Positions 15,201-35,579 of a stretch of 64,000 nt of DNA are shown here, piece after piece. The notes under the pieces are model-generated. The model was not told the DNA's origin. It searched no databases and saw only the letters and a program-made list of their open reading frames with translations. The position numbers and the translations under genes are program-made. Origin of the DNA: Selaginella moellendorffii. Taxonomy: Eukaryota > Plantae > Lycopodiophyta. The number at the start of each line of letters is the position of its first letter. Within the stretch, counting starts at the first letter, position 1. The stretch covers positions 72,537 to 136,536 of the forward strand of contig NW_003314418.1 in the NCBI RefSeq assembly GCF_000143415.4, written 5' to 3'.

Positions 15201-16204
15201 TAGTATTTCTATGGACTTCATCACTTGTTTGCCACGAACACAGAGGGAAAAGGAGCAAATGTGGGTCATAGTGGATCGTTTGACGAAATATTGTTAGTTG
15301 TTGGCTCTTCGGAAGAGTGTCACTGCTTTAGACTTGGTTGTGGTTTACTTGGAGAAGGTTTTTCTTGATTTTGGTTTGCCAGAAGACATCATTAGTGATC
15401 GAGATTCAAAGTTCACCAGTGGATTTTGGAAAAGCTTTGCAAGGCTATGCAAGACAATTTGAACCTCTCGAGTGGAGATTATCCTTAGACGGATGGTCAA
15501 ACCGAGCGTGTGAATCAGATGGTGGAGGATATGCTATGTTGTAGCATTGGTCAAAGGCAAGGATAATGGGATTTATATCTTCCATTAGTGCAATTTCCTT
15601 ACAACAATAGCCAACACAATGGAACCAAGCTAAGTCTTTACTTTGCCATGTTTGGAAGGCATCCTCTAACAACAGTGGAGTTGGGATTGCATTTGAGTAA
15701 GGACGTTCAAGATAAGCTTGATTCCAAGGCAATTGATCTGGCCACAGAACTTGATGAGATTCTGATGGTGTGCAAATAGAATTTGCAAATAGCTCAGGAT
15801 AGAGCAAAGAAGTTTGCCAATGAGCATCACTAAGTCTAGGAATATAAGGTGGGTGATTTCATCTTTGTGTGATTTTTCCGTCAAGTAAGTGGCGGAAAAC
15901 CTTGGTGCCTTTACGGACAGGGAAGAGTGATAAACTTTCTCATCGATATGCTGGCCCATATGAAGTGCTAGAGCGGATCAGTAAGGCGGCTTATCGGGTG
16001 CGGCTGCCAGTTAGGGTGAAAATTCATCCGATATTTTATGTCAACCAGTTGAAAGGTGTACTACCTCGGAGTGACGGGCCTAATGCCTCCTTGATGTATA
16101 TGGATGTGGAAGATGGACCAAGAGCTTGACCAGGGTTCCCCAGAAAGGGTGATCACCGGTACAACTCGTCCTTGGGACAAGGACTTTGTTGGGGGGGGAA
16201 GAAT

Positions 16205-16437
16205 TGTTAGGTGCCAACTTTGACCACATGGTCAACGTCAGTCAAAGGGAGGCTCAAGGGTATAATAAGGCATGTTAGCGTAAGGGACTTGACCTACCCT
16301 AGGGCTCACAGTGGAGTGGCAGTGTAGTGGAGCTTTTGAGGTAGCTCGGGGGTGGTTGGGTGGTGAGGAACCTCAAGAGGTGGCATAGCATAGTCTAAGG
16401 CGACTAAATCTCTGTCTTTTTGTGCCGGATTATAACA
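16205..16437 (+). repeat. 3' LTR of the nested Gypsy
   Basis: Preceded by the polypurine tract ggggggggaagaa and followed by the TSD copy gactt. Confidence 0.93.
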
Positions 16438-16719
16438 GACTTATAGAATAGTATATAAAGTTTCAACAAATTCAACTCCATTCAAATTAGCTTATGGACT
16501 TGAAGCTTTGACACCACTAGAATATACTGTACCATCCTTGAGAATGGTAATTTAGCTGCAGATTAATCAAGAAGAATCAATCAAAAAAAGATTGGCTATG
16601 CTAGAAAAGTTAGATGAAGAAAGATTATATGCTTTATGGACAATTGAAGCCATACAAACAAGGAGAAAAGCTTATCACGATAGAAAACAGACTATAAAGA
16701 AAACTGATAGATTTGAAGT

Positions 16720-16743
16720 AAGCTCTATTTCGTTAAAGTGGGA
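16720..16743 (+). repeat. Left TIR (24 bp)
   Basis: Exact reverse complement of 34808-34831. Confidence 0.95.
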
Positions 16744-17161
16744 ATTGTCATTATCCCATTTGTAAAATAAGGTTTCCAAACCTTTATATAGTATATAAAT
16801 ATAACAAAATTCAACTGCATTGAGGCACATGCCATTTTATTTTAAACAAGGAAATGTCTACTCAATCACTTCTCCTCCCCCTGCCACTGCTTCACCTCTC
16901 TCTTCTCCTTGTCATCGTCATCCAATTTCTTTCCATCCTTTTAATATTGGCTCAGTTGCTCCGAGTCTAGGTGGAGCCCAAGTCCCCATTCAATCTTTAC
17001 TTTCCCCTTATTAATAAAACAACTTCGTAGACTTCCAATAACATGCTGTAACACTTCTAGTATAATGCAAATCCTCTCAAAGAATTGTCTTTTAATATTA
17101 ATACAATGGCATGGAACCCCATGCCATAATAAGTTACATTTTTAAATAAATACATGCCATC

Positions 17162-18039
17162 TCAGACTGTTATTTTTTGCCTCCAACGCCTATACAATAA
17201 TCTTGGAATTTCATCACTCTCCACACTATCAGGATTTAAACCCAATAGTAATGCCATCTCTTCTCTAATACGTCCACGCTCATGTTCAGTGGTCGAAGAA
17301 CCTATCCGGTTGAGCAGATTATGGAGATGCGGATAGTGCTTGGCTAGACAATATACATGCCATAAATGATGACTGGTGTCTGTCCGATCAAATGGCTTCT
17401 GATATACCGTTCCATCTGCCATTTGGTTGATTTCTGCAGCCACCTCCTGGACTGGCCGGTTCTCTATCACCATCGCTTCAAGCCGTTTTGCAAGGTCCCC
17501 CAGAACATACGGTTTCTTCTCCCTAGTTTCCATACTGCAAGAGATGGGGTGCACTGCATATGTGTGCGTGTTCGCTGCAGTTTTAATTGGTGAGTCATCG
17601 ATGATGAGGATTTCACTTGACCTAGCAGTCCAGTTCATCACTACAGCCTCTGGCTTGACGAAGATGGGCTTGCTACCCCTCACATGGACCATAGTCAAGC
17701 AATCCTCCTGCGTTAGGAGAAAGTCAAATGATAATATTACTCGCGTCTGATCGTCTGTAGCAACGTTAATGCATTGTGGCGCATCATGGATGTCCAAACT
17801 CCCAATTGCAAATTGAACCCGGCCCTCTGTTTTAAGTGTCACATGGTCATTATTAGATCACGCAGTTTCTCCCGTGTGATTAATGTGAATCTGTCTCTTT
17901 TGACCAACTTGCGACTGTAGGCTTTGGAGGGTGCAGTGACATTCGAGGACGAGCCACGCTCATGGGAGAAAAGGACACCGTTCAGATCAAAAACGATACA
18001 GTACTTTCGCCGTGACTCTGAAATGAAATGCGTCAGCAT
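17162..18039 (-). pseudogene. FCP1/NIF-homology HAD-superfamily domain inside the transposon (one stop plus one frameshift)
   Basis: Motifs in order: CIVFDLNGVLF, GVWTSMMRHNA (read through the TGA at 17839-17841), FLLTQEDC...KPIFVK, ILIIDDSPIKTAAN..YAVHP. This is typical of the DLNG-type FCP1-homology family. Confidence 0.8.
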
Positions 18040-18067
18040 AAAAAATGGTACAAGTCAATTTTACCAT

Positions 18068-21000
18068 CTACAATATTAGCAAATGGTGCTCCCGATGGTT
18101 GCTCAGAGGGTTTTGGTTGAGGAAACGTGAAGGGCGGAAATATCTCCTTTGCAATGTGGGGTCAATCGCATCCGATGGCGTGTGGGCACATGCCATTTCA
18201 GCTGTAGACTCTGGTACAACTGGCTCAACAGTGGCATGGGGTGGTTCTGATGGCGTGTGATCACACGCCATTTCAGCTGGTGCCTCCGTTGGCAAAGTGG
18301 ACATGACCGAACAGGCAGCAAGGGCGGTGTAGGGAGGTTCCAACGGCACGTAGTCAGACGATTGGGCACATGTTGAGTCCATTGGAAATGAGGATACGAC
18401 CGGCTCGGCGGCTGGGGCGGCCTCATGCGGGTCCAATGGCACTTGGTCACCGTCAGTTGGATACGTGGACAAGATTGACTCAGTGGTATAGGCAGCATCA
18501 AGTGGAGCGTGGTCAGCTTGCTTGGCGTTGATATGGATAGTAGCCTCCACCAGCTTTGATGACTCTTGCAGGCAAGTAGAGTCCACTGGCGGATCCATAT
18601 GCATGTCCAAATATCTCCCTTCGATTGAGATGGTATCCTCCCTACTGGCTACTAAAAACAAACTCATTAGCACATTGAATCGACTATACTGTATTTACCA
18701 TAAACTGCTATTGGGCGCATTGCTGATTCTGAAGGATTGGACATACGTTTCGACCCTTGCTTGGCACTATCCTTCCTCGACACTAAAGGCTAGAGTTTGT
18801 ATCTTAATTCAACTGAATAATCTCTACTTACCATTTCTTCTGCGACCTACATGAACAATGTTAGAAATGGTAAAAGGTTAGGAATGGATGTACTATTATT
18901 TACCTGATGGTTTGTCTTGTATGACCTTCCTCCGCTGCTCTTTGGCCACCTCAGGCTGGCCATCGTCATCATCATCGTCATCGTTGTTATTGTGATCGTC
19001 ACCATTGTGAGGACCATCCAAGTCCTCTTCGTCCTCCTCTTCTTCATCCTCCTCTTCTTCGTCCTCCTCTTCTTCGTCCTCCTCTTCTTTGTCCTCCTCT
19101 TCGTCCTTCTGCTCTTCCTGCTCATTATCTTTCTCTGGCTCCTCATCCCCCTCCTGCATTTCTTCCATAGGCTGCTCAGGCTGGATGGCTTGTTTTTCCA
19201 GGACCATCTTGGGAAAATCATCTAGCCGAGTCTCCATCTCAAAATACAAGACATCCATAGCCTGCTTCAGTGCTTGACCTAGGACCGTATCCTCACCCGA
19301 CTGTCTTAACATGGTTTCTGCACGTTCTTGCACCCTTCGAAGACGACGAGATGAGAAAAACGTGGCCCTGACTTGAAAAGCATCCCTCATCCATTGTACC
19401 TCTCCATTGAGATTGGGGAAGGGGAGTCCGCCATAGGAATCTGAGTCAGGAGGTGGTGATTGGCTCCTTTCACTCAGCCCTTGATCTGCAATGAATGGCA
19501 TGAGCACACACGCCATAACCGCGAGGCATTACCTATCATCTTTTCGTTGCCCTTCTTCCTTTTCGAATCAAATGCCTCTGATCCCGACGACTGTCCAACG
19601 TGCTTTCGCTTTTTATGACCACTGTCAGTTTGAGCTTGATTGGTGATTGCCTGTTTTGCCTTTGAAGAAGTGTCTCTTGCAAGGAATGGCACGAGACCAC
19701 ACGCCATTGCAAATATAATTTGTACCTCCTTTTTTCCTATTGCTTGTCTGTTTGTCCTTCTTCGACGCGCCACCAGTGCGCTTTTCAGTCCTCATGTCTG
19801 AATATTCACAACGATCTATAATCAAAATGGCGTGAGGCCTCACGTGACCTTACCTTGTGCAGGTTGTGAGCTCGGCCTAACATCAGTAGCTGTTAACGCC
19901 GTTTTAGCATCTGGGGGTGGCCACGCTCCTGCATACAGAGCTTGTGAGATAACATTTAAACTTAAAGTGCATACTCACCAGGTTCGCAGAAAAGATACTG
20001 TTTTTCTTTGGCAACTGTAATTATATGCTCCATTGAAGTCACCTCTTCAATGGAGTTTGTCACCGCAACACACGGGACACCCTTGAGTAGTGCGGCTCGA
20101 AAGAATAGTCCGCCGCAGTTGTACTCAACAATGCATTTGCCCTTGGTGTCACCCGCTATTGCGTTGAAGACCCAGCTGAGCATTTCCCATGCTGCACCTG
20201 GAGCTTTCTTTGGATTCGAAAGCTCCATAGCCGTCTTCAGTTCCTCAGGCACGAGTAAATTGACCTCCCTCAGATCAATTCGATCGGCCTTGTCGAACGA
20301 AGCTGGGAAGTCACTCCAGTCCCACTCTGCTGCAGGACCAATAACAAGGGTGAGTGTGAAGATGCGGACATTCGTCGGTATCTTCTTCTTAGCCATTATC
20401 CCATGTATCTCCCGCATCTCCTTGCCTTTCAACCGAGCCTTCACCTCGTTCAAGGCCTTCCAGAACTTGTGATAGAATTCGGAGTCGTAGATCATATAGT
20501 GGACTGAAGATTCCACCTCCGCAAGTCCCACCATTAAGTCAATGATGGAGTTGACTTCGTCTGCATGAGTAATCTCTTCGTTTGTGAAGTCCATCACACA
20601 AAAGATGTTCTTGACCTGCTCATCTCCGCGGGAAACGATGCTCCTCCACCTTTGATCCTCATCCGAATTCACGTATACCCGGTAAGGTTCTCGATAGGCC
20701 TCTGCTGCGGGGTCGAGCTGTTTCTGAAGCCGACGGTCGACATCCCTCTTAATGAAATTTGGATACTGATCCAACTTCTCAGCTTTACTTTTCGTGGCAT
20801 CCCGCAGCAGATCAATGAACTTGGGGGCCCCCTTCACGTACTCGTCGATCTCTTCATTTGACAAGTCCAGCTCTTCCATCATCTCTTGCGTGGTGTCGAT
20901 GCTCACCCTCTCCACGGCCACTTGCTCGAAGATCCAATCCTTCAATAGCGCATGAGCTCTCAGAGTCGTGCACAAGTAGTCGTATGTCACAATATGGCCG

Positions 21001-22761
21001 GGAGTCATTTTGGTCTTGTTGAAGACTACCTCACCACGTAGAAGAGCATTAGCCACTGTCAGAAGGTCGTCGTCGTCTAGAGACCGCGAGAAACGCAAGG
21101 CGTTGAGCTTCAAATCATTGGGCTTCCGGCTGTCCTCCACACCCATTGAGTTTAGCAACTCCCCGTCATGGTACCTCCTCAGCACATCTACCCATTTGTC
21201 AAAAACAACTTTTGTCGCGAGTAGAATGTTATGGATGCTGAGTGTGTCATTGACCCCCAGTGTTTTCGAGAGAAGACTCGAGAATTCCTGCAATGGAAAT
21301 GGCGTGAGGCCACATGCTATGCCACATGCAACGAGGCTTACCTACCAGGCGCTAGTTGCTAGTGCACGTCCTTGTCCTGGTTTTTGTGGCTTCTTCAGTT
21401 GAACCCAGAGCTTTCGTGTTCGTGCCAATGTCTCGTGCAGACCCGATTTGTAGCACGTTTCTTGCTTGACATTCTGCGCGTGGGAGATGGATATGATAGA
21501 TCGGAGGGGCGAGTTGCCTTTTATCAGCGGACAACTCTTGTCTTGAAGACTTTCTTCACCTCCTCGCCCACCATAATATCCAGAACTATCTCTTGCATCG
21601 CCAAGCTAGAATGCTGCCCGGAGACGGCATAGAACCGGATGTTCTGATCGTCCAACACCTTCCTATTGATCAAGTTTGGAAACCTCGTCTCGCCCTTCAT
21701 TGTTTGGTAGTAGGGGATCACGTCTGCGATGTCGGGTGTTACTGGACTTGCCAGCATCTTCTGCTTCAGTTTCTCCACCCACTCATCAGATACTAGCCTG
21801 TGGTTGTATTTGCTTTGGATGTCGATACGGCTCACGTCGATTGTATATACTTTGTTGGAATAGTAACAAGTACTATTATCTGCGACGATTTTTGCTGCCT
21901 CTTCTTGCTCTTTCTGCTCTTTGCGGCTCTTCTTTTTGGTGGGTGTAGTGTTCGAACTCGAGGCAATGGCATCACCGAGTAGCTTCTTTTTTGGAGCAGC
22001 AGAGTCGGACGTCGGCTTGAGCTTGACCACCCTTTTCTGCTTCGGGGTAGTTTCCAGATCGACCCCCTTCCCCTTCGCTTCGCGAACTGGAGGCACTCTC
22101 AACGGCTCAATGTTGGAATATAGTTTTTGAACATCGCCGTAGGTGAGGTCTGTGGATTCCATGTGATCTTCATAGACCCGCAGCGTCTTTGAAATTGTGG
22201 GCCTCCTGGACAACCTCTCCCTAGCTCCCTCTAGGAATTCCTCATAGCCGCTGCCCCTCTCCGGGAAGCCGCTAGGATGTGCAAGGTGGATCTTGAAGGC
22301 GGATGCTGTCTCTACCACAAGTGCCAGTCCATATTCTTGCATGGAATTGCATGGAGTGTCTGTCACTTGGATGAGGATCCCCATGCATTCTTTTCTCCCA
22401 CCATCTGTGTTGTACAGCATCAGATCCTCGCCTTCCATCCCGAAATTCCAACTGGTGAGCTCCTCCCCCTTCTCTGCATCCACATTGACAGTGGCTGGAA
22501 GAAGAACGCAATTCCTCGCCTGTTCAGAAATGCACAACAATTAGAGCTGACAGATGAAAAGCTAGCAGCTGGAAATAACGTGAGGCCACACGCCATTCAC
22601 CACTGCATCAGATGTCTTGAGGCTGCATCCTAAGATGGCGTGAGGCTACACGCCATCTGTAACCGGACTGCACTCGAGAGCCCAATCGGTGCATGCCAAT
22701 GTTGCTACTGAATGGCATGTGGCCTCATGCCATTTTCTACTTGGCCTAAAAGACTTACCAT
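18068..22761 (-). pseudogene. Multi-exon transposon accessory gene: ParB/DGQHR-like domain, degenerate MTase-like segment, acidic low-complexity tract; may continue into the FCP1-like exon
   Basis: ATG at 22759-22761 directly precedes a GTAAGT donor. GT-AG introns join the ORFs at 21524-22540, 19962-21293 and 18896-19516 in frame, with small exons between. There is a 1-bp frameshift near 21526 and a probable CAG>TAG at the donor near 21344. Confidence 0.7.
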
Positions 22762-23149
22762 TTGAAGCCGAATGGAGACCGTGACAATCGAGGCCGGACT
22801 CGCTGGCGAATGTGCACTGTGTGTGCAGCGGATCGTAGCAGCAAGGCTACTCTACCACTTACAGTTGGAGAGTGGCACTGAAATCTCCCGGGACGCCAAG
22901 TGGGCTGCGTGTGGGTGGCGGAGTGGGTGGCGGAGTTGGCGGCGAAGTTACAAACTGGGTGTGTCTTGAAGTGGACGCCGATGCACACGAGCGCGATGCG
23001 AGCGCGAGTGTGATGCAAGCGCGAGTGGACGCCGATGCACACGAGAAACCTGTAGAGAAGTGAGCGTGATCGCGAGTGGGAGCGCGAGTGTGATGCGAGC
23101 GCGAGCGCGAGTACGAAGCAAAATGCAAAACCTAACCTCACACGCGCGA

Positions 23150-25070
23150 AATGTCACAACGGTTGGTAATCCCGCCACGTCATCATTCCTCGGACTTGGG
23201 CGCCACCATTAATTTCTGGATTGCCGCGCGCATGCAAGCACGCAAAATCCAAAAGAAATCCACAACGTCATCATTCCTCGGACTGCATGCACGCGAAATC
23301 CAAAAGAAAGATCATGATTGGGATATCATTTAATACCCTTGCTATATTTATACCATGCATGATTGGATATTCCAAAGCATCTTGTATTTCCAAAAATGGC
23401 AGATGTTCAGCTAAATAAAGAAATTCTATCTGTTTCTATTTTTCTCTCAAATCAATATTATAGCGTGTGGGCTCATGCAATTTTGAACCAAAGAAACCCA
23501 AAAAACGTTGAACCCAAAATATTTTGAAAAAACCCAAAAAACCCTAAACATTTTAAACCCAAAAATCCAGGCGTCTTGTGGCGTTATTCCTTGAATGGCG
23601 TGTGGGCGCATGCCATTTTCAGGGCCAAATGCTGAATGGAGAAAAATTCCCTTTCAGTGCAAATGCTGCAAGAGGCAGATGCCGAGCACAAAGGACTGTA
23701 ACTACCTCACATGACACAGATAAACTTTTCTCTATTTGGCAAAGATAAACTTTATAGCGTGTGGGCTCATGCAATTTTGAACCCAAAAAATGCACCAAAA
23801 AATTCTCGGCGTCATCTGGCGTTATCTCTTGAATGGCGTGGGGCCGCATGCCATTTTCAGGGGCACATAGGAGTATATTCCTAGGATATTCTGACACGCA
23901 CGAGATTTTTTTGAGTTTTTTGGAGATCCAACCGTTAGATCGCAACTAGATTTTACAGAATGGTATACAATGTCTTTCTTGATGACCCTGCAAAGAAGCA
24001 TCTCGATCGGACACCACATGAGACCACACGAGCCTTACAATGTTTCAGGGGCATTTGCCATAGATCCGACTGTTATTTTGCTCCAAGATTTTACAGTTTG
24101 GTGTGCATTGACCTTTCCATCGACACTGCAAAGGGACATCACAATCAGATGTGGGATCACAAGAAACTAACTTCACTAACTCTGGTTTCACCAAGATGTA
24201 CGTAAGGAGTTATGAAATGAAAGGACCCTCTCTATTGAAATATGTTTATGGTCCTAGGGGCATTGTGACATATCAAAGGATTTTGCATCAAGTTCTGTAT
24301 TTGCATGTTTATCAAGCTACTGAATTGCTAAACCCTAAACCCTAAACCCTAAACCCTAAACATGTGGCAAATGCTGCGTGAAGAAAGATGCCCCTTCTGG
24401 GCAAATGCTGTAAGACGCAGATGCCGAGCAGATGTATCTCAGGCTAGCGAAGGGGACAAATGAAAGCTAGCTATAAACATGATGGGATGCAAATAGATTA
24501 TTAGGCTGGTCCTACGAAAATCAAAAACCATAATTGAAAACATTGAAAATGCAAAAAGAAAGGTTTATAATATTTTTGAATTTTAAGCAACCAAAGGAAT
24601 GTAAGTAGGGCATGTGTTTGTAAGTTTAAAAATGCCTCAACCACTTAAATTCAGAAGTAAATAAAGCTGTTTCTATTTTTGGTACAGGTAAACTTTATAG
24701 CATGTGGGCTCATGCAATTTTGAACCCAAAAATGCACCAAAAAATGCTCGACTAGCATTATTCTTTGAATGGCGTGTGGCCTTATATTGCCATAAATGGA
24801 CGTACACACAGAGCATAATTATTCCTTTACACGGCGAATAATCTTGGCGCGGATCGCTGACATGGTATGGCAAAGTTCGAATCACTGACATGGCACAGCT
24901 GGATCGAGGCAAGGACATGATGTGACAAAGTTCAACCTCCGACAGCAAAGTCTAGAAGCTACTCAGTTTGAAATTTGTCAAAGGAGTCATAAGATCTGGT
25001 TTGTCAGAGGATTTGATGTGACATTCAAGCGTGTGTTATTTTTGAATTCTCGAACTCATTCCTAGGTCTA
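23150..25070. promoter_or_regulatory. Putative bidirectional control region between the divergent accessory and transposase genes
   Basis: Flanked by GC-rich low-complexity leaders (~22890-23150 and ~25080-25300). Contains three related ~100-160 bp blocks (~23455, ~23750, ~24690), each with paired palindromes, plus cgtcatcattcctcggact twice and a telomeric tract. Confidence 0.45.
24328..24360 (+). repeat. Interstitial plant telomeric repeat (CCCTAAA)4
   Basis: ctaaa followed by 4 x ccctaaa. The duplicate at 29068-29086 has 2 units. Confidence 0.9.
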
Positions 25071-25862
25071 TCATTTTTGTGCGCCGTGTTCTTGGTTCCG
25101 CTGAGCGCAGTGAGCGCTGCTTGTGTAAGCGGCGTTGTGGGCTGTGGTTTATTCGTCTACGAGCGGTTGCGGCATTGCGAGCGCCATTGCGGGCGGCAGT
25201 TTATGTGAGTGGCAGTTTGTGCGAGCGGCGCTACGAGCAGTTGCGGTGTTGTGAGCGGCGCTACGAGCAGTTGCGGTGTTGCGAGCGGCACTGTCTTTGG
25301 TGTGGCTACCGCTTCCTCTTGATATTCGGCACTTGTGCTTCTTGGTATGTTCACCATGGAATGGCTTAGGACCACATTTAGAAATGGCATGAGGCCACAT
25401 GCCATCTTGGGCCCTTGCAATTTCATGGCTAGCGTATTGTCATGTATGTTTTTACTTGCCTGCAGCTGTGTGTATATCAAGATGGCATGAGGCCTCATTG
25501 CATCTTTGGCCCCTGCTAGCCTATTGCCATATTCCTTTTGCCTTGCTGCAACTGTATATATTTTTGTATGGGTGACTAGTCACGCACACAAAAATATATA
25601 CAGTTGCAGCAAGGCAGGTTTACATTTTGAAACAGGCTAGCAGGGGCCAAAGATAGCGTGAGGCCTCATGCCATTAGTGGTACCACTAATGGCATGAGGG
25701 CTCATGCCAATTTTGTGAATGCAAAATTTCACGTGGGTGTCAATAGCATGTTTGAATAATGGCATGTGGCCTCATGCTATTGAGGTTGTTTGGTATGTTA
25801 TGATTTAGGCCATTCTCCAATCATTTTTTGTATGGTCTTAACTTCTTTTCTGCACTTTTAGA

Positions 25863-27780
25863 ATGGCCTTCAGGGTTGGGGAAAAAGTTTACATTTTGAA
25901 TGGTGGGAAGAGAGTTGCAAAAGGGACCCTTGTGTCTATGGATCGGAACTTTGTTATACACTGTCAAAGGCTTGGGGAAGGCAATGCTGCTGTATCAGTA
26001 GAGACTGTCTTCAATGGGAATGTGGTCGCTATTGAACGAGGAGAGATGGTCGTCGGGGTAAATGTTGTTGTTGCCTTGAAAAATCTTCAGAAGAAAGCAG
26101 ATGTTGGGGACAGCGCAAGTGCGACGCATGTTCCCTCCGTGGATCTTAAGAACCGTGCTACATGGATTCAGGCAAAGGTGTTTCTAAACAACCCCGAGGG
26201 GGAGGTGGTAGCTGAGGGCTTAGCCACAGTTGTCGATCCAAGAGATGCGGTTGCTAACCAAGAATTGGGCTGGGATGATATTGGAGTTGCAATTTTAGAG
26301 GTTGTTGACACAGAAGAAAACAGTCTGACTATTGGAAGCATTGTGCGGTGGAAATTGAGGCACTTAGTGTTTGAGAATGTGAAGGATTCACAATCAAACA
26401 CCACTACAACTGATGACAGAACATCTCTTCATGGGAAAAGAAAGTACACCTTCCTAAAGCGCAGCCAAAGGGATCTGAGCAACGAACCGAAAAGGCAAAA
26501 AATGGCGATGGAGGTTCGAATGGTCTCGACAGTTGCTTGTTGCAAGAGGAGGTGCTGTCAACATGCTGATTGGGATGCTATTGAAGAGGAGAGAGCAAGA
26601 TACAAGACATTATCCTGGAAGGCAGCTCGCAATTTTGTGTATGAGGCATTACGGTCATCTGTTGATGCTTCAGAACATCAGGTGGGGGGCATGGTCTTCC
26701 AGAGGGGTTTGGTTTGCATGAAGGCATGGAGAATCATTTATGAAGTCCCTCGAACCACATTCTACAGAATCAAAACTGAGTTCGAGGAACAAAGGGTTCA
26801 ACAGGCAGTCCAATGTCCTCACCCTCCCACAACTCTACGATGAATTCCAAAATTGCATCAAAGGCACTGTTGAAGCTGCACTTCTGACAGAGGTTCCAGA
26901 CTTTAAGGGGTTTGTAAGAGGCTATATCAGGGACGGATCCGAAACGCTGATTGGCCACTCCAAGCCTCTTCAGTTTCATTTCAGCATGCGTGACGATGCT
27001 CCAGTGATGAGGTACAAGATGAGAGAATGGGGCACAGTGTGGCTGCCAGTGGACGGCATTGAACTCTTCAAGAGAGATCCCATAACTGGGGAACCTATGA
27101 TTCCTCAGGGTTCCCCACGACTGATGCACCCGGATGGACTCAAAGACCAGGAAACTATAGTGGCCGGGATTAGACAGCATATTGCCTTCTGGAAGAGGGG
27201 GTTGGTGTTTGGTGGAGAATCCTATTTTCAGAGGTGCAAGCCTTTGCTCGAATACTGGGAGAAGATTATATCTGCTATCCAAAATGGGCCGGTTGTATAT
27301 GAAGAATTGGAAGAGTCCTTTTGGCCAGAACCCAGAGCACCAGATAGTAGTGGAACAATGTCCTCTGGAAATGCAGTGACAGATAACGATGTTGAGGATC
27401 ACTATTGTGGGCCGAGGAACAAGAAGCCGGATTCAGCATTCAATCCAGTACAGGTCTGCAAAGGAATGGTCATGCTTGTCAGACCCAGTAATAAAAAACA
27501 AATGATATGGGTGGGGCGCTGCATCATTGATGCAGAGGAGGACGCGGAAACTAACTCCTTCAATGTAACTGTGGAGTGGTTCAAGCCAAGTTCCGGATAT
27601 ACAAAGGATTGCCTAGAAAAGAGATGGGTGCTGAATCCAAGGGATCCCAGCATGAGCATATCGGTGGATAATGTTGTGCATGGTTGGATGCGGAAGCAGA
27701 GTGCCACCATCACCTTGCCAGACCATGCAAGAGATGCAGCAAGAGCATTCATAACCCGGGTTCAAGGTGAGATTCATTAA
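25863..27780 (+). pseudogene. Sola-like transposase copy 1, catalytic core deleted
   Basis: Near-identical to 30557-33625 but lacks the 1151 bp equivalent to 31507-32657. The junction lies at a TCCA microhomology near 26810 and causes a frameshift. Confidence 0.88.
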
Positions 27781-30177
27781 TATTCCTTTACTAAGTTTCT
27801 AATGTATTTTATTTCAAGGTGAACAATCCGAATCTGAATCAGAGGAGGCGTGATGGCATGTGGCCTGAGATGATGTGACATATGCATTTACCAATCACAC
27901 GTGCATAAATCTAATAATATGGCGTGTGGCCCATATTAATGGCACATAAACCCATATTGTGGGCTTACGTGCTTTATGTACCATCATTCCCTTGCAGCGT
28001 GTGTGTTGGTTTCCTTTTATAACACAACGAACTCCATATTTTAGGGTGAAGAGCGTTCTCATGGCAAGCACAAAATCTGTAAGTGAGGCAGAAAAGGAGA
28101 CAGAGAAGGAGATAGGTGAAGATGTAGAATATATAAGTCTTCCAAACTCCCCGTACTATACTCCAGGTGATCATTTTTCTGAACAAACGGCAACATTAAC
28201 AACTATCGAGAACGCCCCAGTAACGTCAGAGACAACAATCCAAAGCAAAACAATTGACCCGGAGAAGGATGATAGTACCGCTGAGAGTACCAAAAAGGAG
28301 GTGTCCACTAGCGCTTAGGCTTATAATGGCGTGTGCCCTCATGCCATTTACTTGATCACCAAATACCTTTTTCCCTTTGCACTAGTATATCTTAATACCG
28401 GTCTGAGAAATAGAATGGCATGTGCCCTCAGGCCTTTTACTAAATCACCTTGAAAGAAATGCAAGCCTCTATGTCGTAAAAAAAAGGTACTGAGAGAAAT
28501 TCCTTAAGCAAGACGTACGGCCTCTTNNNNNNNNNNNNNNNNNNNNNNNNNNNNNNNNNNNNNNNNNNNNNNNNNNNNNNNNNNNNNNNNNNNNNNNNNN
28601 NNNNNNNNNNNNNNNNNNNNNNNNNNCGTAGCGGGCTTCCACGAGATTACATTGAGTTTTTTGGAGATCCAACCGTTAGATCGCAACTAGATTTTACAGA
28701 ATGGTATACAATGTCTTTCTTGATGACCCTGCAAAGAAGCATCTCGATCGGACACCACATGAGACCACACGAGCCTTACAATGTTTCAGGGGCATTTGCC
28801 ATAGATCCGACCGTTATTTGCTCCAAGATTTTACAGTTTGGTGTGCATTGACCTTTCCATCGACACTGCAACGGGACATCACAATCAGATGTGGGATCAC
28901 AAGAAACTAACTTCACTAACTTTGGTTTCACCAAGATCTACGTAAGGAGTTATGAAATGAAAGGACCCTCTCTATTGAAATGTGTTTATGGTCCTAGGGG
29001 CATTGTGACATATCAAAGGATTTTGCATCAAGGTCTGTATTTGCATGTTTATCAAGCTACTGAATTGCTAAACCCTAAACCCTAAACATGTGGCAAATGC
29101 TGCGTGAAGAAAGATGCCCTTTCTGGGCAAATGCTGTAAGAGGCAGATGCCGAGCAGATGTATCTCATGCTAGCGAAGGGGACAAACGAAAGCTAGCTAT
29201 AAACATGACGGGATGCAAATAGATTACTAGGCTGGTCCTGCAAAAATCAGAAACCATAATTGAAAACATTGAAAATGCAAAAAGAAAGGTTTATAATATT
29301 TTTAAATTTTAAGCAACCAAAGGAATGTAAGTAGGGCATGTGTTTGTAAGTTTAAAAATGCCTCAACCACTTAAATTCCCAAGTAAATAAAGCTGTTTCT
29401 ATTTTTGGTACAGGTAAACTTTATAGCGTGTGGGCTCATGCAATTTTAAACCCAAAAATGCACCAAAAAATGCTCGACTAGCATTATTCTTTGAATGGCA
29501 TGTGGCCTTATATTGCCATAAATGGACGTACACACACAGCATAATTATTCCTTTACACGGCGAATAATCTTGGCGCGGATCGCTGACATGGCATGGCAAA
29601 GTTCGAATCACTGACATGGCACAGCTGGATCGAGGCAAGGACATGATGTGACAAAGTTCAACCTCCGACAGCAAAGTCTAGAAGCTACTCAGTTTGAAAT
29701 TTGTCAGAGGAGTCATAAGATCTGGTTTGTCAGAGGATTTGATGTGACATTCAAGCGTGTGTTATTTTTGAATTCTCGAACTCATTCCTAGGTCTATCAT
29801 TTTTGTGCGCCGTGTTCTTGGTTCCGCTGAGCGCAGTGAGCGCTGCTTGTGTAAGCGGCGTTGTGGGCTGTGGTTTATGCGTCTACGAGCGGTTGCGGCA
29901 TTGCGAGCGCCATTGCGGGCGGCAGTTTATGCGAGTGGCAGTTTGTGCGAGCGGCGCTACCAGCAGTTGCGGTGTTGCGAGCGGCACTGTCTTTGGTGTG
30001 GCTACCACTTCCTCTTGATATTCGGCACTTGTGCTTCCTGGTATGTTCACCATGGAATGGCTTAGGACCACATTTAGAAATGGCATAAGGCCACATGCCA
30101 TCTTGGGCCCTTGCAATTTCATGGCTAGCGTATTGTCATGTATGTTTTTACTTGCCTGCAGCTGTGTGTATATCAAG

Positions 30178-30368
30178 ATGGCATGAGGCCTCATGCCATC
30201 TTTGGCCCCTGCTAGCCTATTGCCATATTCCTTTTGCCTTGCTGCAACTGTATATATTTCTGTATGGGTGAAAAATATATACACAAAAATATATACAGTT
30301 GCAGCAAGGCAAAAGGAATATAGCAACAGGCTAGTAGGGGCCAAAGATAGCGTGAGGCCTCATGCCAT
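30178..30368. repeat. ~190-bp inverted repeat capped by two 22-bp palindromes, upstream of the transposase
   Basis: Arms of ~85 bp (...ttttgccttgctgcaactgtatatattt / aaatatatacagttgcagcaaggcaaaagg...). A partly altered counterpart lies at ~25482-25675. Confidence 0.88.
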
Positions 30369-30556
30369 TAGTGGTACCACTAATGGCATGAGGGCTTATG
30401 CCAATTTTGTGAATACAAAATTTCACGTGGGTGTCAATAGCATGTTTGAATAATGGCATGTGGCCTCATGCTATTGAGGTTGTTTGGTATGTTATGATTT
30501 AGGCCATTCTCCAATCATTTTTTGTATGGTCTTAACTTCTTTTCTACACTTTCAGA

Positions 30557-33500
30557 ATGGCCTTCAGGGTTGGGGAAAAAGTTTACATTTTGAATGGTGG
30601 GAAGAGAGTTGCAAAAGGGACCCTTGTGTCTATGGATCGGAACTTTGTTATACACTGTCAAAGGCTTGGGGAAGGCAATGCTGCTGTATCAGTAGAGACT
30701 GTCTTCAATGGGAATGTGGTTGCTATTGAACGAGGAGAGATGGTCGTCGGGGTAAATGTTGTTGTTGCCTTGAAAAATCTTCAGAAGAAAGCAGATGTTG
30801 GGGACAGCGCAAGTGCGACGCATGTTCCCTCCGTGGATCTTAAGAACCGTGCTACATGGATTCAGGCGAAGGTGTTTCTAAACAACCCCGAGGGGGAGGT
30901 GGTAGCTGAGGGCTTAGCCACAGTTGTCGATCCAAGAGATGCGGTTGCTAACCAAGAATTGGGCTGGGATGATATTGGAGTTGCGATTTTAGAGGTTGTT
31001 GACACAGAAGAAAACAGTCTGACTATTGGAAGCATTGTGCGGTGGAAATTGAGGCACTTAGTGTTTGAGAATGTGAAGGATTCACAATCAAACACCACTA
31101 CAACTGATGACAGAACATCTCTTCATGGGAAAAGAAAGTACACCTTCCTAAAGCGCAGCCAAAGGGATCTGAGCAACGAACCGAAAAGGCAGAAAATGGC
31201 GATGGAGGTTTGAATGGTCTCGACAGTTGCTTGTTGCAAGAGGAGGTGCTGTCAACATGCTGATTGGGATGCTATTGAAGAGGAGAGAGCAAGATACAAG
31301 ACATTGTCCTGGAAGGCAGCTCGCAATTTTGTGTATGAGGCATTACAATCATCTGTTGATGCTTCAGAACATCAGGTGGGGGGCATGGTCTTCCAGAGGG
31401 GTTTGGTCTGCATGAAGGCATGGAGAATCATTTATGGAGTCCCTCAAACCACATTCTACAGAATCAAAACTGAGTTCGAGGAACAAAGGGTTCAACAGGT
31501 AGTCCATGGGAACGATGGTACGCACAAAACCAGGGGTCATGTTGTATATGGAGAGGCAATCTTCAAGAGGTTTGTCGAGACATGTAGCGAGCAGCAACCA
31601 CATAAAACCCGCCTCTTGGAAGATGGAACACGAGACACCCAACGAGTTCTCCCTTCCATGTATACCAAGGGGGCCATATTGGAAGATGTGAATCGGGAAC
31701 TCTAAAGTAATGGCTACAGGAAGCTGAGCCAATCTAGATTTAGTAGATTGTGGAGCAACAGGTTCAGGGATGTGAGTATAGGAAAGTACTCCAGCTTTTC
31801 AAAGTGTGACGAGTGCACTGCTATCAAAATGGCTTTGTCGAAGAATTCTTGCAGCGCTCAAGAGCGAGAGACGTTGGTTAGAAGGCGGCTCGACCACAAC
31901 ATCGAGCAGAGAAGTTGCAGGACTGCATATTATCATAATAGGATTCTCTCCATGGAGAGACCTGACTCTTACCTCTGCATCATCCACGACAAAATGGACC
32001 AGAAAAAGACGTGCTTACCTCGACTCAATCCTGCCCCCAAGGCAATCTCTTCATCCATGCAGCTGCCTGTGTCTCTGTTTGGCATAATCGCTCATGGGCA
32101 TGGTGCCCAGAACTATGGGAACTTCTTTGTACCTCTATGGGGTGGCGGGGGTGCAAACATGATGATTGCGTCCCTAGCAAAACACTTAAGGTCTCTGCAA
32201 AGTGCGCAGACTGAGCTGAACGGCCAACCCTTGCATAAGGCCCTTGTCGATCGAACCCCATACAGGGTTCAACTGGAGGAGGAGCAAAGGCTTGCAGTAT
32301 CGCGTGGGGCCCCATGCCATCCCAGTGAATATGTTGGCCGTCAGATTGTAGGGTTATCACGTGAGGCCTCATGCCATTCCGACGAGGCTGGTCGCCCGGT
32401 GAATGCACAGCCTCATCCAAACGAAGCAGAATCTCAAGGAAGTTCTTGCGGCCGATGTGGCCTTCCACCCCATCTTCTGCTCCAAACAGACAATGCTGGC
32501 AGTGAGAACAAAAACATGTACGTCTTCGCGTACTTGGCGATGCTTGTTGCCAAAGGCATATTTGAAACGGTTACACTTGGCTTTCTCATGGTTGGGCACA
32601 CTCATGAAGACGTCGATGCCATGTTCAGTCACCTGGCAGAGTCCCTCCGGCGATCCAATGTCCTCACCCTCCCACAACTCTACGATGAATTCCAAAATTG
32701 CATCAAAGGCACTGTTGAAGCTGCACTTCTGACAGAGGTTCCAGACTTTATGGGGTTTGTAAGAGGCTACATCAGGGACGGATCCGAAACGCTGATTGGC
32801 CACTCCAAGCCTCTTCAGTTTCATTTCAGCATGTGTGACGGTGCTCTAGTGATGAGGTACAAGATGAGAGAATGGGACACAGTGTGGCTGCCAGTGGACG
32901 GCATTGAACTCTTCAAGAGAGATCCCATAACTGGGGAACCTATGATTCCTCAGGGTTCCCCACGGCCGATGCACCCGGATGGACTCAAAGACCAAGAAAG
33001 TATAGTGGCCGGGATTAGACAGCATATTGCCTTCTGGAAGAGGGGGTTGGTGTTTGGTGGAGAATCCTATTTTCAGAGGTGCAAGCCTTTGCTCGAATAC
33101 TGGGAGAAGATTATATCTGCTATCCAAAATGGGCCGGTTGTATATGAAGAATTGGAAGAGTCCTTTTGGCCAGAACCCAGAGCACCAGATAGTAGCGGAA
33201 CAATGTCCTCTGGAAATGCAATGACAGATAACGATGTTGAGGATCACTATTGTGGGCCGAGGAACAAGAAGCCGGATTCAGCATTCAATCCAGTACAGGT
33301 CTGCAAAGGAATGGTCATGCTTGTCAGACCCAGTAATAAAAAACAAATGATATGGGTGGGGCGCTGTATCACTGATGCAGAGGTGGACGCGGAAACTAAC
33401 TCCTTCAATGTAACTGTGGAGTGGTTCAAGCCAAGTTCCGGATATACGAAGGATTGCCTAGAAAAGAGATGGGTGCTGAATCCAAGGGATCCCAGCATGA

Positions 33501-33625
33501 GCATATCGGTGGATAATGTTGTGCATGGTTGGATGCGGAAGCAGAGTGCCACCATCACCTTGCCAGACCATGCAAGAGATGCAGCAAGAGCATTCATAAC
33601 CCGGGTTCAAGGTGAGATTCATTAA
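30557..33625 (+). pseudogene. Sola-like DDD transposase copy 2, ~1022 aa with two in-frame nonsense codons
   Basis: The ORFs at 30557, 31214 and 31748 share one frame, broken by TGA 31211-31213 (CGA in copy 1) and TAA 31703-31705. Motifs: FSKCDEC, CIIHDKMD, LQTDNAGSENKN, FLMVGHTHEDVDAMFS. Confidence 0.85.
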
Positions 33626-34807
33626 TATTCCTTTACTAAGTTTCTAATGTATTTTATTTCAAGGTGAACAATCCGAATCTGAATCAGAGGAGGCTTGATA
33701 TAGTGTGTGAGGTAAAACAAAGATGATGTGACATATGCATTTACCAATCACACGTGCATAAATCTAATAATATGGCGTGTGGCCCATATTAATGGCACAT
33801 AAACCCATATTGTGGGCTTACGTGCTTTATGTACCATCATTCCCTTGCAGCGTGTGTGTTGGTTTCCTTTTATAACACAACGAACTCCATATTTTAGGGT
33901 GAAGAGCGTTCTCATGGCAAGCACAAAATCTGTAAGTGAGGCAGAAAAGGAGACGGAGAAGGAGATAGGTGAAGATGTAGAATATATAAGTCTTCCAAAC
34001 TCCCCGTACTATACTCCAGGTGACCATTTTTCTGAACAAATGGCAACATTAACAACTATCGAGAACGCCCCAGTAACGTCAAAGACAACAATCCAAAGCA
34101 AAACAACTGACCCAGAGAAGGATGATAGTACCGCTGAGAATACCAAAAAGGAGGTGTCCACTAGCACTTAGGCTTATAATGGCGTGTGCCCTCATGCCAT
34201 TTACTTGATCACCAAATACCTTTTTCCCTTTGCACTAGTATATCTTAATACCGGTCTGAGAAATAGAATGGCATGTGCCCTCAGGCCTTTTACTAAATCA
34301 CCTTTGAAAGAAATGCAAGCCTCTATGTCGTAAAAAAAAGGTACTAGAGAAATTCCTTAATAATATGAATGTTATTTAGTTTCATGAAAATACACTAAGG
34401 GTCAAATGAGTTAAATGACTTCTCCAGACTAGCAATGCCTCTTGCTACACCTTCACAATTAAATTCGTTAGAAAAAGATAACATTGAATAATATCTAAAT
34501 GTTCTCACCATTAAGTGATATGTCTGGCTAATAGGAATGACGTTCATCTTGGAAAGCTCACCACACGCTCAATGAACAAACAAATAGTGTGTGCACGCAT
34601 GCCATCGCTCTTCTTTAGCTTCAGATTCGGCTTGTTCACCTTGACAATGAGATTTATTATACAACCAAATGGACTCAGTCTGGACATAAAATCACCGCGC
34701 TAGTCACCATGCCCCAGATATGTCTAGCCCCTGGACAAAAAACATATAATTTCACGTCATTTTCAAATACTTGAAAATTTGTACCTAGTCCCATTTTACT
34801 GAATAAA

Positions 34808-34831
34808 TCCCACTTTAACGAAATAGAGCTT
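34808..34831 (-). repeat. Right TIR (24 bp)
   Basis: tcccactttaacgaaatagagctt followed by the TSD aagt. Confidence 0.95.
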
Positions 34832-35579
34832 AAGTTGGAAATTTGTTCTATGGTATAGAGGAAATGTCAACAAAATCGGAGGCAAATTGGTACATCAATG
34901 GGAAGGACCATTCAAGATCACAAGTATGCAAACACCCGGCACAACTCACTTAGTGACACTTGATGATGAAGAAATTCAAATAGTCAATCTCAACAAATTG
35001 AGAAAATATCAAGAACCAAGTATAGCGTATATGCAAGCCAAGCACACCATGCTGGAATTGACTACCAATGAAACCAATACAACTCACGTTGTCCACAAAA
35101 TAGGTCCACAACAATTACAAACAACTCTACTCAAGCAAAAACTTAGTGAAAATGCAAGAACACCATATGAATGAAACAATAAAACAGAGTTAGCCCTAAC
35201 CCTGACAGTGAGGTAGTGCGCGCTGGAACATCACAAGGGTAAGCTTGAGTGGCAAGGAAATTTTGAGATCACAAGTGCGCTAGAGAGTGATCGTCAGCTA
35301 AGCGCTCTCACCCATCTCAAATGAGTGCATCAAATTCTAAGAAACACACCAATCGAGAGAAACAAGAAGAAAGCAAGTAGAAAAGAGAGTGCCCACAAAA
35401 GAAGCAAGAAGAGTGTGTTCACGAGTATAGAAAGAGCGCTCATATCTTTTCCTCTATTTGCATCACAGGTACAAGTGCATTCTCAACAGCACTGAAAAGT
35501 CGATACAATGTGAACCAGGCAAACACCCAAGACAGATATTGTCATCCTTTCTCAAAATCTTGAGTGGCAATTCAATGCC

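What the first reader, a model, noticed from the sequence alone, without database searches (positions are those of the whole stretch)
16720..34831. Giant Sola-like transposon pairing a ParB-like/MTase-like/FCP1-like accessory gene with ~35 copies of its own 22-bp palindrome: candidate TE-encoded protein plus binding-site system
Seen: exact TIR/TSD boundaries, two divergent genes, and the dyad ATGGCRTG-N6-CAYGCCAT scattered end to end. By eye there are ~26 copies excluding the duplicated half and ~37 in total, and I noticed none outside the TIRs. Established: ParB-family proteins load at palindromic parS sites, and VANDAL (Mutator-like) elements encode VANC proteins that bind motifs accumulated in their own non-coding DNA to counter silencing. 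Inference: this element may encode an analogous but unrelated self-recognition module for anti-silencing, for bridging the ends of a very long element, or for self-marking. I am not aware of a described equivalent but cannot check the literature.
Basis: partly seen in the sequence, partly recalled or inferred. Interest (0 to 1): 0.93.

Follow-up and report, generated by a model that had tools for sequence, protein, structure and literature searches.

The report
Giant Sola1 transposon with own palindromes
This is a decayed copy of a giant Sola1-type DNA transposon that carries, next to its transposase, a conserved accessory gene and about 26 copies of a private 22-24-bp palindrome in its non-coding DNA; related transposons carry different private palindromes, which fits a transposon-encoded protein recognising its own element.

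Summary
A perfect 22-bp terminal inverted repeat bounds 16722-34829. The dyad ATGGCRTG-N6-CAYGCCAT occurs 34 times inside (up to 3 mismatches; 26 after removing an internal duplication) and never in the other 46 kb.

The transposase (Pfam DUF7869) shows the Sola1 catalytic signature. The divergent accessory locus is homologous to genes beside related transposases in the liverwort Riccia sorocarpa. Those relatives give sub-threshold N6/N4 DNA-methylase hits and above-threshold FCP1/NIF hits. "ParB-like" rests on a motif only.

The new result is comparative. Each of five related lineages has its own dense palindrome. In Riccia, 0 of 39 sites lie in exons, and introns hold several.

The best reading is cognate binding sites for an element-encoded dimeric DNA-binding protein, probably the accessory protein, that marks the whole element. 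Which protein binds is not shown.

The concept is not new. Sola1 with a ParB-like/methylase accessory gene is published for Ectocarpus. ParB-like accessory genes beside inverted-repeat arrays are published for red-algal Plavaka elements. VANC/VANDAL is a proven analogue.

This copy is dead: two stop codons in the transposase. Half of it may be a scaffolding artefact at the N gap.

The parts
16722..16743 (+). Left terminal inverted repeat (22 bp, perfect), preceded by GTAA
34808..34829 (-). Right terminal inverted repeat (22 bp, perfect), followed by TTAA
21527..22540 (-). Accessory locus, first ORF (338 aa). Its last ~110 aa hold the 'VSGQHSS' domain (ParB/Srx-like by pattern only), 32% identical to Riccia P0076 residues 105-235
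19979..21288 (-). Accessory locus, second exon. It holds a conserved helical domain (aa 1-143; AlphaFold pLDDT 83.5) and, near its end, the methylase motif-I-like 'IVEYNCGG' strand-helix
19486..19978 (-). Zone of four very short GT..AG introns: 19978-19929, 19853-19816, 19725-19676 and 19532-19486. Three carry the palindrome. The reading frame ends at TGA TAG (19538-19533)
21288..21345 (-). Short intron-like segment (GTAGGTAAGC ... palindrome ... TTCCATTGCAG) before the second exon
17165..19485 (-). Distal accessory ORFs: an acidic low-complexity ORF (18899-19485), a low-complexity ORF with two in-frame palindromes (18071-18694), and FCP1/NIF-like pieces (18054-17842 with 'VFDLNGVL'; 17857-17165 with 'ILIIDDSP'). 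The pieces are in different frames
22541..25862 (.). Divergent intergenic region with 13 palindromes, the highest density in the element
25863..27780 (+). Transposase copy A, with a ~1.15-kb internal deletion and a frameshift
28527..28626 (.). Assembly gap at the junction of the internal duplication (23899-28507 ~ 28640-34360)
30557..33625 (+). Transposase copy B. One frame of ~1022 codons, with premature stops TGA 31211-31213 and TAA 31703-31705. DUF7869 / Sola1-type DDE core. Two in-frame palindromes (32299, 32356) lie in the variable linker before the second catalytic Asp
16814..34605 (.). The 34 palindrome sites, by start position: 16814, 17106, 18175, 18250, 19495, 19686, 19827, 21299, 22575, 22635, 22712, 23460, 23595, 23754, 23833, 24697, 25384, 25482, 25653, 25689, 25759, 28326, 28415, 29423, 30080, 30178, 30347, 30383, 30453, 32299, 32356, 34179, 34268, 34584

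Best explanation
The region is a dead copy of a giant Sola1-superfamily cut-and-paste transposon, inserted into the integrase region of an LTR retrotransposon. It carries a divergent gene pair. One gene is a ~1020-aa DDE transposase. The other is an accessory locus with four parts: an N-terminal 'SGQHSS' domain, a conserved helical domain, a degenerate beta-class N6/N4-methylase-like module and an FCP1/NIF-like module.

The 26 unique 22-24-bp palindromes are most likely cognate binding sites for a dimeric, sequence-specific DNA-binding protein made by the element itself. The accessory protein is the more probable binder. The sites lie in every non-coding stretch (intergenic promoter region, introns, 3' regions), roughly one per 0.5-0.7 kb. 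A bound protein would therefore mark the element along its whole length and separate it from all other DNA, including sister families.

The inferred purpose is control of the element's own chromatin or transcription. This could be anti-silencing as with VANC, or self-modification as proposed for algal ParB-methylase proteins.

Shown here: the architecture, confinement of the motif, conservation of the accessory gene, family-specific palindromes, and exclusion from exons. Inferred: that a protein binds, which protein binds, and what binding does.
For: Motif confinement: 34 sites inside the element and 0 outside, with 0 expected by chance. Half-sites are conserved while spacer and flanks vary. 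At the CpG in each half-site only one of the two deamination outcomes is seen (16-26 of 34 against 0-1 of 34). That points to constraint on neighbouring bases rather than free decay.

Relatives of the transposase each carry their own dense dyad:
- Riccia L004: 39 copies of TTCGGGACGCGTCCCGAA.
- Riccia L006 and L008: a GCGAC variant of that motif.
- Riccia L007: 14 copies of ATGTTGGCACG-NN-CGTGCCAACAT.
- Contig L003: 21 copies of CCCTATGGC-N6-GCCATAGGG.
- Contig L005: 9 copies of TTGGCCATATGGCCAA.
These counts of 7-20 exact dyads compare with 1-2 in shuffled sequence.

In Riccia L004, 0 of 39 sites fall in exons although exons make up 40% of the span (P about 2e-9). Introns of both genes hold 2-5 sites, and there are none in the 9 kb beyond the element.

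The accessory gene is conserved and in the same divergent position. hhalign of the window/Selaginella profile against a Riccia exon gives E 1.9e-10. A profile search returns 33 Riccia paralogues. The SGQHSS domain aligns at 32% identity. A profile hit (E 0.004) lies at the edge of L007, beyond its palindrome array.

The three closest lineages share the half-site core ATGGC with different spacing or orientation. This is what an altered dimer geometry would produce. The TIR does not resemble the palindrome, so the transposase's end-binding specificity does not explain it.

Literature: the VANC precedent (PMC5735166), the Sola1 ParB-like/methylase gene (PMC12477816), and ParB-like PAG3 next to inverted-repeat arrays (10.1101/2025.02.11.637652).
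Against: There are no binding data. ParB-likeness is unsupported by Pfam, NCBIfam, a PDB profile search or Foldseek. The conserved helical domain has no structural match.

No DPPY-type catalytic motif was found in any paralogue. The phosphatase motif reads DxNxV in the window and DxExL in Riccia, not DxDxT. The enzymatic outputs may therefore be absent.

Transposase and accessory gene travel together, so co-variation with the palindrome cannot separate them. In contigs L003 and L005 no accessory gene was detected within the sequence available. A Mytilus relative has a weakly similar divergent gene but no dyad enrichment.

The window copy itself is non-functional.
Confidence: 0.5

Rival explanations
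1. The palindromes are bound by the transposase. They would act as internal enhancers of synapsis or transposition, or as autoregulatory promoter elements of the divergent gene pair, with the accessory protein doing something else.
For: The highest site density lies between the two divergent genes. The transposase has a long N-terminal region with a Cys-rich segment and an HTH-like segment. L003 and L005 show palindromes upstream of the transposase with no detectable accessory gene in the contig. Transposases can act as sequence-specific activators of cognate copies (bioRxiv 10.64898/2026.08.24.746577, abstract).
Against: The TIR and the palindrome are unrelated. Sites are spread through the interior and through introns rather than concentrated at the ends. 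L003 and L005 are short contigs that may simply not reach the accessory gene. In L007 the accessory ORF lies ~9.7 kb upstream, beyond the array.
Confidence: 0.25
2. The palindromes act at the nucleic-acid level, as RNA or DNA hairpins. They could be small-RNA precursors, splicing aids in very short introns, or recombination hot spots.
For: Three of the four window mini-introns carry the palindrome 9-12 nt upstream of the 3' splice site. The Riccia L007 family shows two variants with matched changes in both arms.
Against: In the window the half-site sequence is conserved while the central 6 bases are variable and often not self-complementary. That is the reverse of what a hairpin requires. Most sites are intergenic. 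A palindrome-free 50-nt intron sits next to the others, so short introns are the local norm. Related lineages keep the half-site core but change spacing and orientation.
Confidence: 0.1
3. The sites have no function for the element. They are host transcription-factor sites, or neutral products of local duplication, that hitch-hiked as the family amplified.
For: Some sites arise by local or tandem duplication: window repeat families D8, D10 and D12, 27-28-bp arrays in Riccia, and a 153-bp array in L003.
Against: Sites with unrelated flanks dominate in the window. At least five lineages in different hosts each evolved a different dense palindrome. The exon exclusion, combined with the presence of sites in nearly every intron, points to selection for density.
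Confidence: 0.1

Closest known systems
Sola1-1_Ec32 of Ectocarpus (Dinatale, Craig et al. 2025, PMC12477816)
   Same: [quoted passage not shown] The authors propose binding and modification of the element's own DNA.
   Different: That paper mentions no palindrome or inverted-repeat array for the Sola1 element. Here the methylase-like part is degenerate, an FCP1/NIF-like module is added, and ParB-likeness is not demonstrable.
Plavaka PAG3 of Bostrychia moritziana (Petroll et al. 2025, bioRxiv 10.1101/2025.02.11.637652)
   Same: A transposon accessory protein with a ParB-like N-terminus, with tandem arrays of inverted repeats next to the gene across families. The authors propose binding and modification of the element's own DNA.
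   Different: It belongs to a different transposon superfamily (Plavaka/CACTA-type). Its effector domain is different (2OG oxygenase). Its arrays lie adjacent to the gene, rather than being spread through every intron and intergenic stretch.
VANC / VANDAL21 of Arabidopsis (Hosaka et al. 2017, PMC5735166)
   Same: An element-encoded protein binds a short motif that is dense only in its own family. The motif lies in non-coding regions including introns, evolves by tandem duplication, and differs between sister families. The effect spreads over the whole element.
   Different: The element is Mutator-like, the protein is unrelated, the motif is 9 bp and non-palindromic in direct arrays, and the function is experimentally shown.
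Bacterial ParB-parS and phage/plasmid ParB-methylase fusions (established knowledge; Iyer et al. 2016, PMC4738411)
   Same: Dimeric binding to palindromic sites present in several copies. ParB-type domains are fused to N6/N4 methylases in phages and are found in some eukaryotic lineages.
   Different: No CTP-binding or arginine-patch motif was recognisable here. The context is eukaryotic chromatin, and there are dozens of sites per element.

Membership tests
Sola1 superfamily of DNA transposons | Transposase with the Sola1 RNase H-like catalytic core (D ... DNCGxQN[RK]N ... GHT) | tested here: met
   The window has DKMDQ, LLLQTDNAGSENKN and MVGHTHEDVD. hhalign of the DUF7869 alignment A2 against the Sola1-1_AP core from Majorek et al. 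2014 (supplement, PMC3985635) gives E 1.7e-4 over 41 columns spanning the second Asp and GHT. The template is short, so support is moderate.
Sola1 superfamily of DNA transposons | Terminal inverted repeats and a 4-bp target-site duplication (Bao et al. 2009; recalled from memory, paper not held) | tested here: inconclusive
   A perfect 22-bp TIR is present. The flanks are GTAA and TTAA. A second copy also has TTAA at the right end. This fits TTAA with one substitution, or a TA duplication.
Transposon ParB-like/N4-N6 methylase accessory proteins (Ectocarpus Sola1 type) | ParB-like DNA-binding domain | tested here: inconclusive
   Only a pattern was found: a beta-strand segment, TPxIAD(V/L)(I/L)P(Y/F), then SGQHSS. 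It is conserved between the window and Riccia. There is no hit in Pfam, NCBIfam or PDB profiles, and the AlphaFold model of this part has low confidence.
Transposon ParB-like/N4-N6 methylase accessory proteins (Ectocarpus Sola1 type) | N6_N4 DNA methylase domain (PF01555) with SAM-binding motif I and catalytic (D/S/N)PP(Y/F/W/H) motif | tested here: not met
   Motif I region: six of ten Riccia paralogues give sub-threshold PF01555 hits (E 2.7e-5 to 6e-3, below the 26.7-bit cut-off). The top Foldseek hits are beta-class N6A methylases but are not significant (E ~2). No catalytic motif IV was found in any of the 33 paralogues, and by eye none was seen in the window's second-exon translation (printed). 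The window ORF alone gives no hit. The domain is methylase-derived at best and probably not a working methylase.
Transposon ParB-like/N4-N6 methylase accessory proteins (Ectocarpus Sola1 type) | Encoded on the opposite strand next to a Sola1 transposase | tested here: met
   Window. Riccia L004 and L006. Edge of L007.
FCP1/SCP (NIF, PF03031) phosphatases | NIF domain with the DxDx(T/V) motif | tested here: inconclusive
   Riccia P0073 scores 25.3 bits against a cut-off of 21.8. P0067 carries both methylase-like and NIF hits in one protein. The gene next to L004 is annotated NIF. The window pieces give no Pfam hit, and hhalign to the Riccia NIF start gives E 0.065. The motif reads DLNGV in the window and DVEGL in Riccia, not DxDxT.
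VANC-type self-recognition system (functional analogy, not homology) | Motif dense in its own family only, in non-coding parts, and differing between sister families | tested here: met
VANC-type self-recognition system (functional analogy, not homology) | The element-encoded protein binds the motif and relieves silencing | not testable with these tools
   This needs EMSA, DAP-seq or ChIP, plus methylome data.

The most novel reading that the evidence does not exclude
One clade of Sola1 transposons, found in the liverwort Riccia, the window's unidentified host and several unidentified contigs, runs a eukaryotic parS-like system. A fusion protein of prokaryotic ancestry (SGQHSS domain, helical domain, methylase-like fold, FCP1-like phosphatase) loads as a dimer on dozens of private palindromes kept in every intron and intergenic stretch. 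It thereby brings a (pseudo)enzymatic effector, for example one acting on the polymerase CTD, to the whole element. Protein and palindrome co-evolve quickly enough that sister families in one genome no longer cross-react. This would be a second, independent invention of VANC-like self-recognition, with a dyad-symmetric and easily reprogrammed code.
Probability: 0.3. Interest if true: 0.8.

Novelty: new variant of a known kind. Interest (0 to 1): 0.62.

Why it matters
How a transposon tells itself apart from the rest of the genome has been shown experimentally for only one system, VANC. For the ParB-like accessory proteins of giant algal transposons, self-binding is so far only a suggestion in two genome papers.

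This family supplies the missing cis side of that idea:
- long, unambiguous palindromes;
- a different palindrome in each of at least five related lineages;
- exclusion from exons, but presence in nearly every intron;
- several diverged, seemingly intact protein/palindrome pairs within one sequenced liverwort genome.

Together these turn the proposal into a direct binding and specificity-swap experiment. If it holds, it would provide natural pairs of orthogonal DNA-binding proteins and 18-24-bp sites. It would also show what the unusual methylase-like and CTD-phosphatase-like modules do on chromatin.

Tried and rejected
- Pfam, NCBIfam and PDB sequence searches of all window accessory ORFs found nothing relevant.
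- The word-indexed homologue search with the 338-aa ORF found nothing.
- The exhaustive representative search with the 443-aa ORF gave only three weak hits, the best from Selaginella at E 1e-8.
- AlphaFold of Riccia P0076 with 38 rows gave mean pLDDT 47. Foldseek against PDB found nothing significant.
- AlphaFold of the window's helical domain gave pLDDT 83.5, but there was no PDB match below E 1.
- The profile of the SGQHSS domain against PDB sequences gave no ParB, Srx or DndB hit.
- The palindrome as a tiny element made of the TIRs was rejected, because the sequences are unrelated.
- The palindromes as chance or low-complexity sequence was rejected.
- The host could not be identified. Rfam found nothing. 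Cluster look-ups gave only a UniParc number. A plant-type telomere-like repeat inside the element is the only hint.
- Papers by Bao et al. 2009 and Yuan & Wessler 2011 are not held. The Sola TSD rule is therefore quoted from memory.
- Pfam on the divergent gene of the Tribonema locus gave nothing useful.

Full report
**1. The observation**

The pattern ATGGCRTG-N6-CAYGCCAT has 12 exact matches in the window, against none in 100 shuffles. With up to 1, 2 and 3 mismatches there are 21, 32 and 34 matches. All lie between 16814 and 34605, and none in the other ~46 kb.

Aligning the sites gives a 24-bp perfect palindrome as consensus, A-ATGGCGTGAGGCCTCACGCCAT-T. The half-sites are well conserved, the central six bases are more variable, and the flanks are unrelated. 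These are therefore independent sites and not copies of a longer repeat.

At the CpG of each half-site only one deamination product is common: G to A in 16 of 34 on the left, and the mirror C to T in 26 of 34 on the right. The other product occurs 0-1 times. The neighbouring base is thus kept, and the R/Y position is tolerated variation rather than free decay.

**2. Ends, insertion site and the gap**

The 22-bp sequence GCTCTATTTCGTTAAAGTGGGA occurs exactly twice, in inverted orientation, at 16722-16743 and 34808-34829.

The flanks together read through as the C-terminal integrase region of an LTR retrotransposon. Its protease and reverse transcriptase lie at 12.5-14.3 kb. Both ends therefore belong to one insertion.

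The target duplication is not exact: GTAA on the left and TTAA on the right. An internally deleted copy of the same family, from an independent public read assembly (L001, 97-98% identical), also has TTAA after its right end. The duplication is either TTAA with one substitution, or TA with the TIR one base longer.

Positions 23899-28507 are a 96-97.6% copy of 28640-34360. The junction falls in the N run 28527-28626. Copy A of the transposase carries a 1.15-kb deletion. Whether this is a true tandem duplication or a scaffolding artefact cannot be decided from the sequence.

**3. The transposase**

Positions 30557-33625 form one reading frame of ~1022 codons, broken by TGA at 31211 and TAA at 31703. 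It matches Pfam DUF7869 at E 2e-42.

Full-length relatives at 37-42% identity come from unnamed assemblies. More distant relatives occur in the liverwort Riccia sorocarpa, Mytilus, Branchiostoma, Exaiptasia and Tribonema.

The catalytic signature is DKMDQ, then LLLQTDNAGSENKN, then MVGHTHEDVD. It matches the Sola1-1_AP core printed in the supplement of Majorek et al. 2014 (PMC3985635). hhalign gives E 1.7e-4 over the block with the second Asp and GHT. "Sola-like" is therefore right, and more precisely the element is Sola1.

**4. The accessory locus**

On the minus strand there are these ORFs:
- 22540-21527 (338 aa);
- 21341-19965 (459 aa stop-to-stop; 443 aa from the first start codon at 21293);
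- an acidic ORF and a low-complexity ORF (19528-18071);
- two pieces at 18054-17165.

None gives a Pfam, NCBIfam or PDB hit on its own.

Homology appears through relatives. In Riccia, the locus of transposase P0023 has, in the same divergent position, an 805-aa gene followed by a gene with a NIF (FCP1-like) domain. The window's second ORF, together with a Selaginella homologue, matches a Riccia exon at hhalign E 1.9e-10. The end of the first ORF aligns at 32% identity with Riccia P0076 across a segment containing TPxIADxxP(Y/F) and SGQHSS.

A profile search returned 33 Riccia paralogues. Six of the ten scanned gave sub-threshold hits to the motif-I end of the N6_N4 DNA methylase family. One protein (P0073) passed the NIF threshold, and one (P0067) carried both methylase-like and NIF hits.

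No (D/S/N)PP(Y/F/W/H) motif was found in any paralogue. The phosphatase motif reads DLNGV in the window and DVEGL in Riccia. Both "enzymes" may therefore be degenerate.

"ParB-like" has only pattern-level support here. Profile searches and two AlphaFold/Foldseek attempts did not confirm it. The well-folded helical domain (pLDDT 83.5) has no structural match.

**5. The decisive comparison**

Every related locus I could fetch from the green-lineage clade has its own dense dyad:
- Riccia L004: 39 copies of TTCGGGACGCGTCCCGAA.
- Riccia L006 and L008: a GCGAC variant of the same motif.
- Riccia L007: a second family with 14 copies of ATGTTGGCACG-NN-CGTGCCAACAT, extended to about 44 bp.
- Contig L003: 21 copies of CCCTATGGC-N6-GCCATAGGG.
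- Contig L005: 9 copies of TTGGCCATATGGCCAA.

Exact-dyad counts of 7-20 compare with 1-2 in shuffled sequence.

In Riccia L004, none of the 39 sites lies in an exon of either gene, although exons are 40% of the span (P about 2e-9). Individual introns hold 2-5 sites, and there are none in the 9 kb beyond the element.

Some sites sit in 27-28-bp or 153-bp tandem arrays. This is the same growth mode as described for VANC targets (PMC5735166).

The window, L003 and L005 share the half-site core ATGGC with different spacing or orientation.

A Tribonema locus has a dyad-bearing ~280-bp array between a divergent gene and the transposase. A Mytilus locus shows no enrichment.

**6. Placement in the window**

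- Thirteen sites lie in the divergent intergenic region.
- Two lie near the left end, downstream of the accessory genes.
- Three lie 3' of transposase copy B, and copy A has duplicates of two of them.
- Four lie in very short GT..AG introns of the accessory gene.
- Two lie in frame in a low-complexity ORF.
- Two lie in frame in the variable linker of the transposase. This is the position where the Riccia gene has a palindrome-bearing intron.

Removing three of the predicted mini-introns in turn lengthens the ORF from 443 to 467, 526 and 539 codons.

**7. Interpretation**

Several features point to recognition by a dimeric protein encoded by the element:
- the motif is long and dyad-symmetric, with conserved half-sites;
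- it is private to each lineage;
- it is excluded from exons but kept in nearly every non-coding segment;
- it travels with a conserved accessory gene.

I favour the accessory protein (about 0.5) over the transposase (about 0.25), for three reasons. The TIR and the palindrome are unrelated. The sites are not concentrated at the ends. The literature on related accessory proteins points the same way. No result here separates the two proteins, because they are always linked.

Hairpin-based roles and neutral hitch-hiking are less likely. The half-site sequence, not complementarity, is what is conserved in the window. Five lineages also evolved different dense palindromes independently.

**8. What is known**

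- Dinatale et al. 2025 (PMC12477816) describe the 21.5-kb Sola1-1_Ec32 element. It has a divergent 1104-aa ParB-like/N4-N6 methylase gene, and the authors suggest such proteins bind and modify their own transposon. The paper does not mention palindromes in that element.
- Petroll et al. 2025 (bioRxiv 10.1101/2025.02.11.637652) report arrays of inverted repeats next to a ParB-like accessory gene in red-algal Plavaka elements, with the same suggestion.
- Iyer et al. 2016 (PMC4738411) list ParB-HTH/methylase fusions in chlorophytes and chytrids.
- VANC/VANDAL is the experimentally proven analogue.

The finding is therefore a new variant of a known kind. What is new is the liverwort-related clade, the FCP1-like module, the degenerate catalytic motifs, the element-wide and intron-filling distribution, and the documented change of palindrome between sister lineages.

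**9. Limits**

- The host species is unknown.
- The window copy is dead.
- The duplication may be an artefact.
- Homology to the Ectocarpus protein was not tested.
- All functional statements are inference.

Noticed in passing
window 19486-19978 and 21288-21345 (minus strand): There are five GT..AG introns or intron-like segments of only 38-58 nt. Four carry the palindrome 9-12 nt before the 3' splice site. Removing three of them in turn extends the ORF from 443 to 539 codons. Introns this short say something about the host's splicing.
   Followed up: partly
window 24328-24361: A plant-type telomere-like repeat, (CCCTAAA) x 4.9, lies inside the element's intergenic region. It is the only hint to the host lineage found in the window.
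   Followed up: no
L007:2075-7852 (Riccia sorocarpa CM100795.1): The ~44-bp palindrome family has two variants whose differences are mirrored in both arms: GGCACG/CGTGCC with GGCGGAA/TTCCGCC, against GGAACG/CGTTCC with GGAGGAA/TTCCTCC. They are partly arranged in a ~335-bp tandem array. Symmetry is maintained through change.
   Followed up: partly
L002:10001-11425 (Selaginella moellendorffii GL377575.1): P0051 (451 aa) is a stand-alone homologue of the middle and methylase-like part of the accessory protein. It sits among ordinary host genes, with no transposase and no dyad enrichment nearby. It may be a domesticated copy.
   Followed up: partly
L009:856-5481 (Mytilus edulis OY782961.1): A divergent 487-aa gene upstream of a Sola1 transposase gives a weak match (E 0.039) to the helical-domain profile, but the locus has no palindrome enrichment. 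The gene pair may be older than the palindrome system.
   Followed up: partly
L010:5617-7896 (Tribonema minus JAFCMP010000279.1): A ~280-bp tandem array, each unit with a GTGAC...GTCAC dyad, lies between a divergent 921-aa gene and a DUF7869 transposase.
   Followed up: partly
window 28504-28526 against 34357-34380: Copy A of the duplication stops matching copy B exactly at a TTAA, 19 bases before the N gap. Either something else is inserted there, or the contig end is chimeric.
   Followed up: no
window 12498-16719 and 34834-36200: The host sequence of the insertion is a degenerate LTR retrotransposon (protease, reverse transcriptase, integrase C-terminus). The window also contains four further N gaps (587-686, 44226-44570, 55736-56047, 62029-62128).
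   Followed up: partly
window 18993-19170: A 12-15-bp tandem repeat encodes a long Asp/Glu-rich tract in the accessory locus.
   Followed up: no
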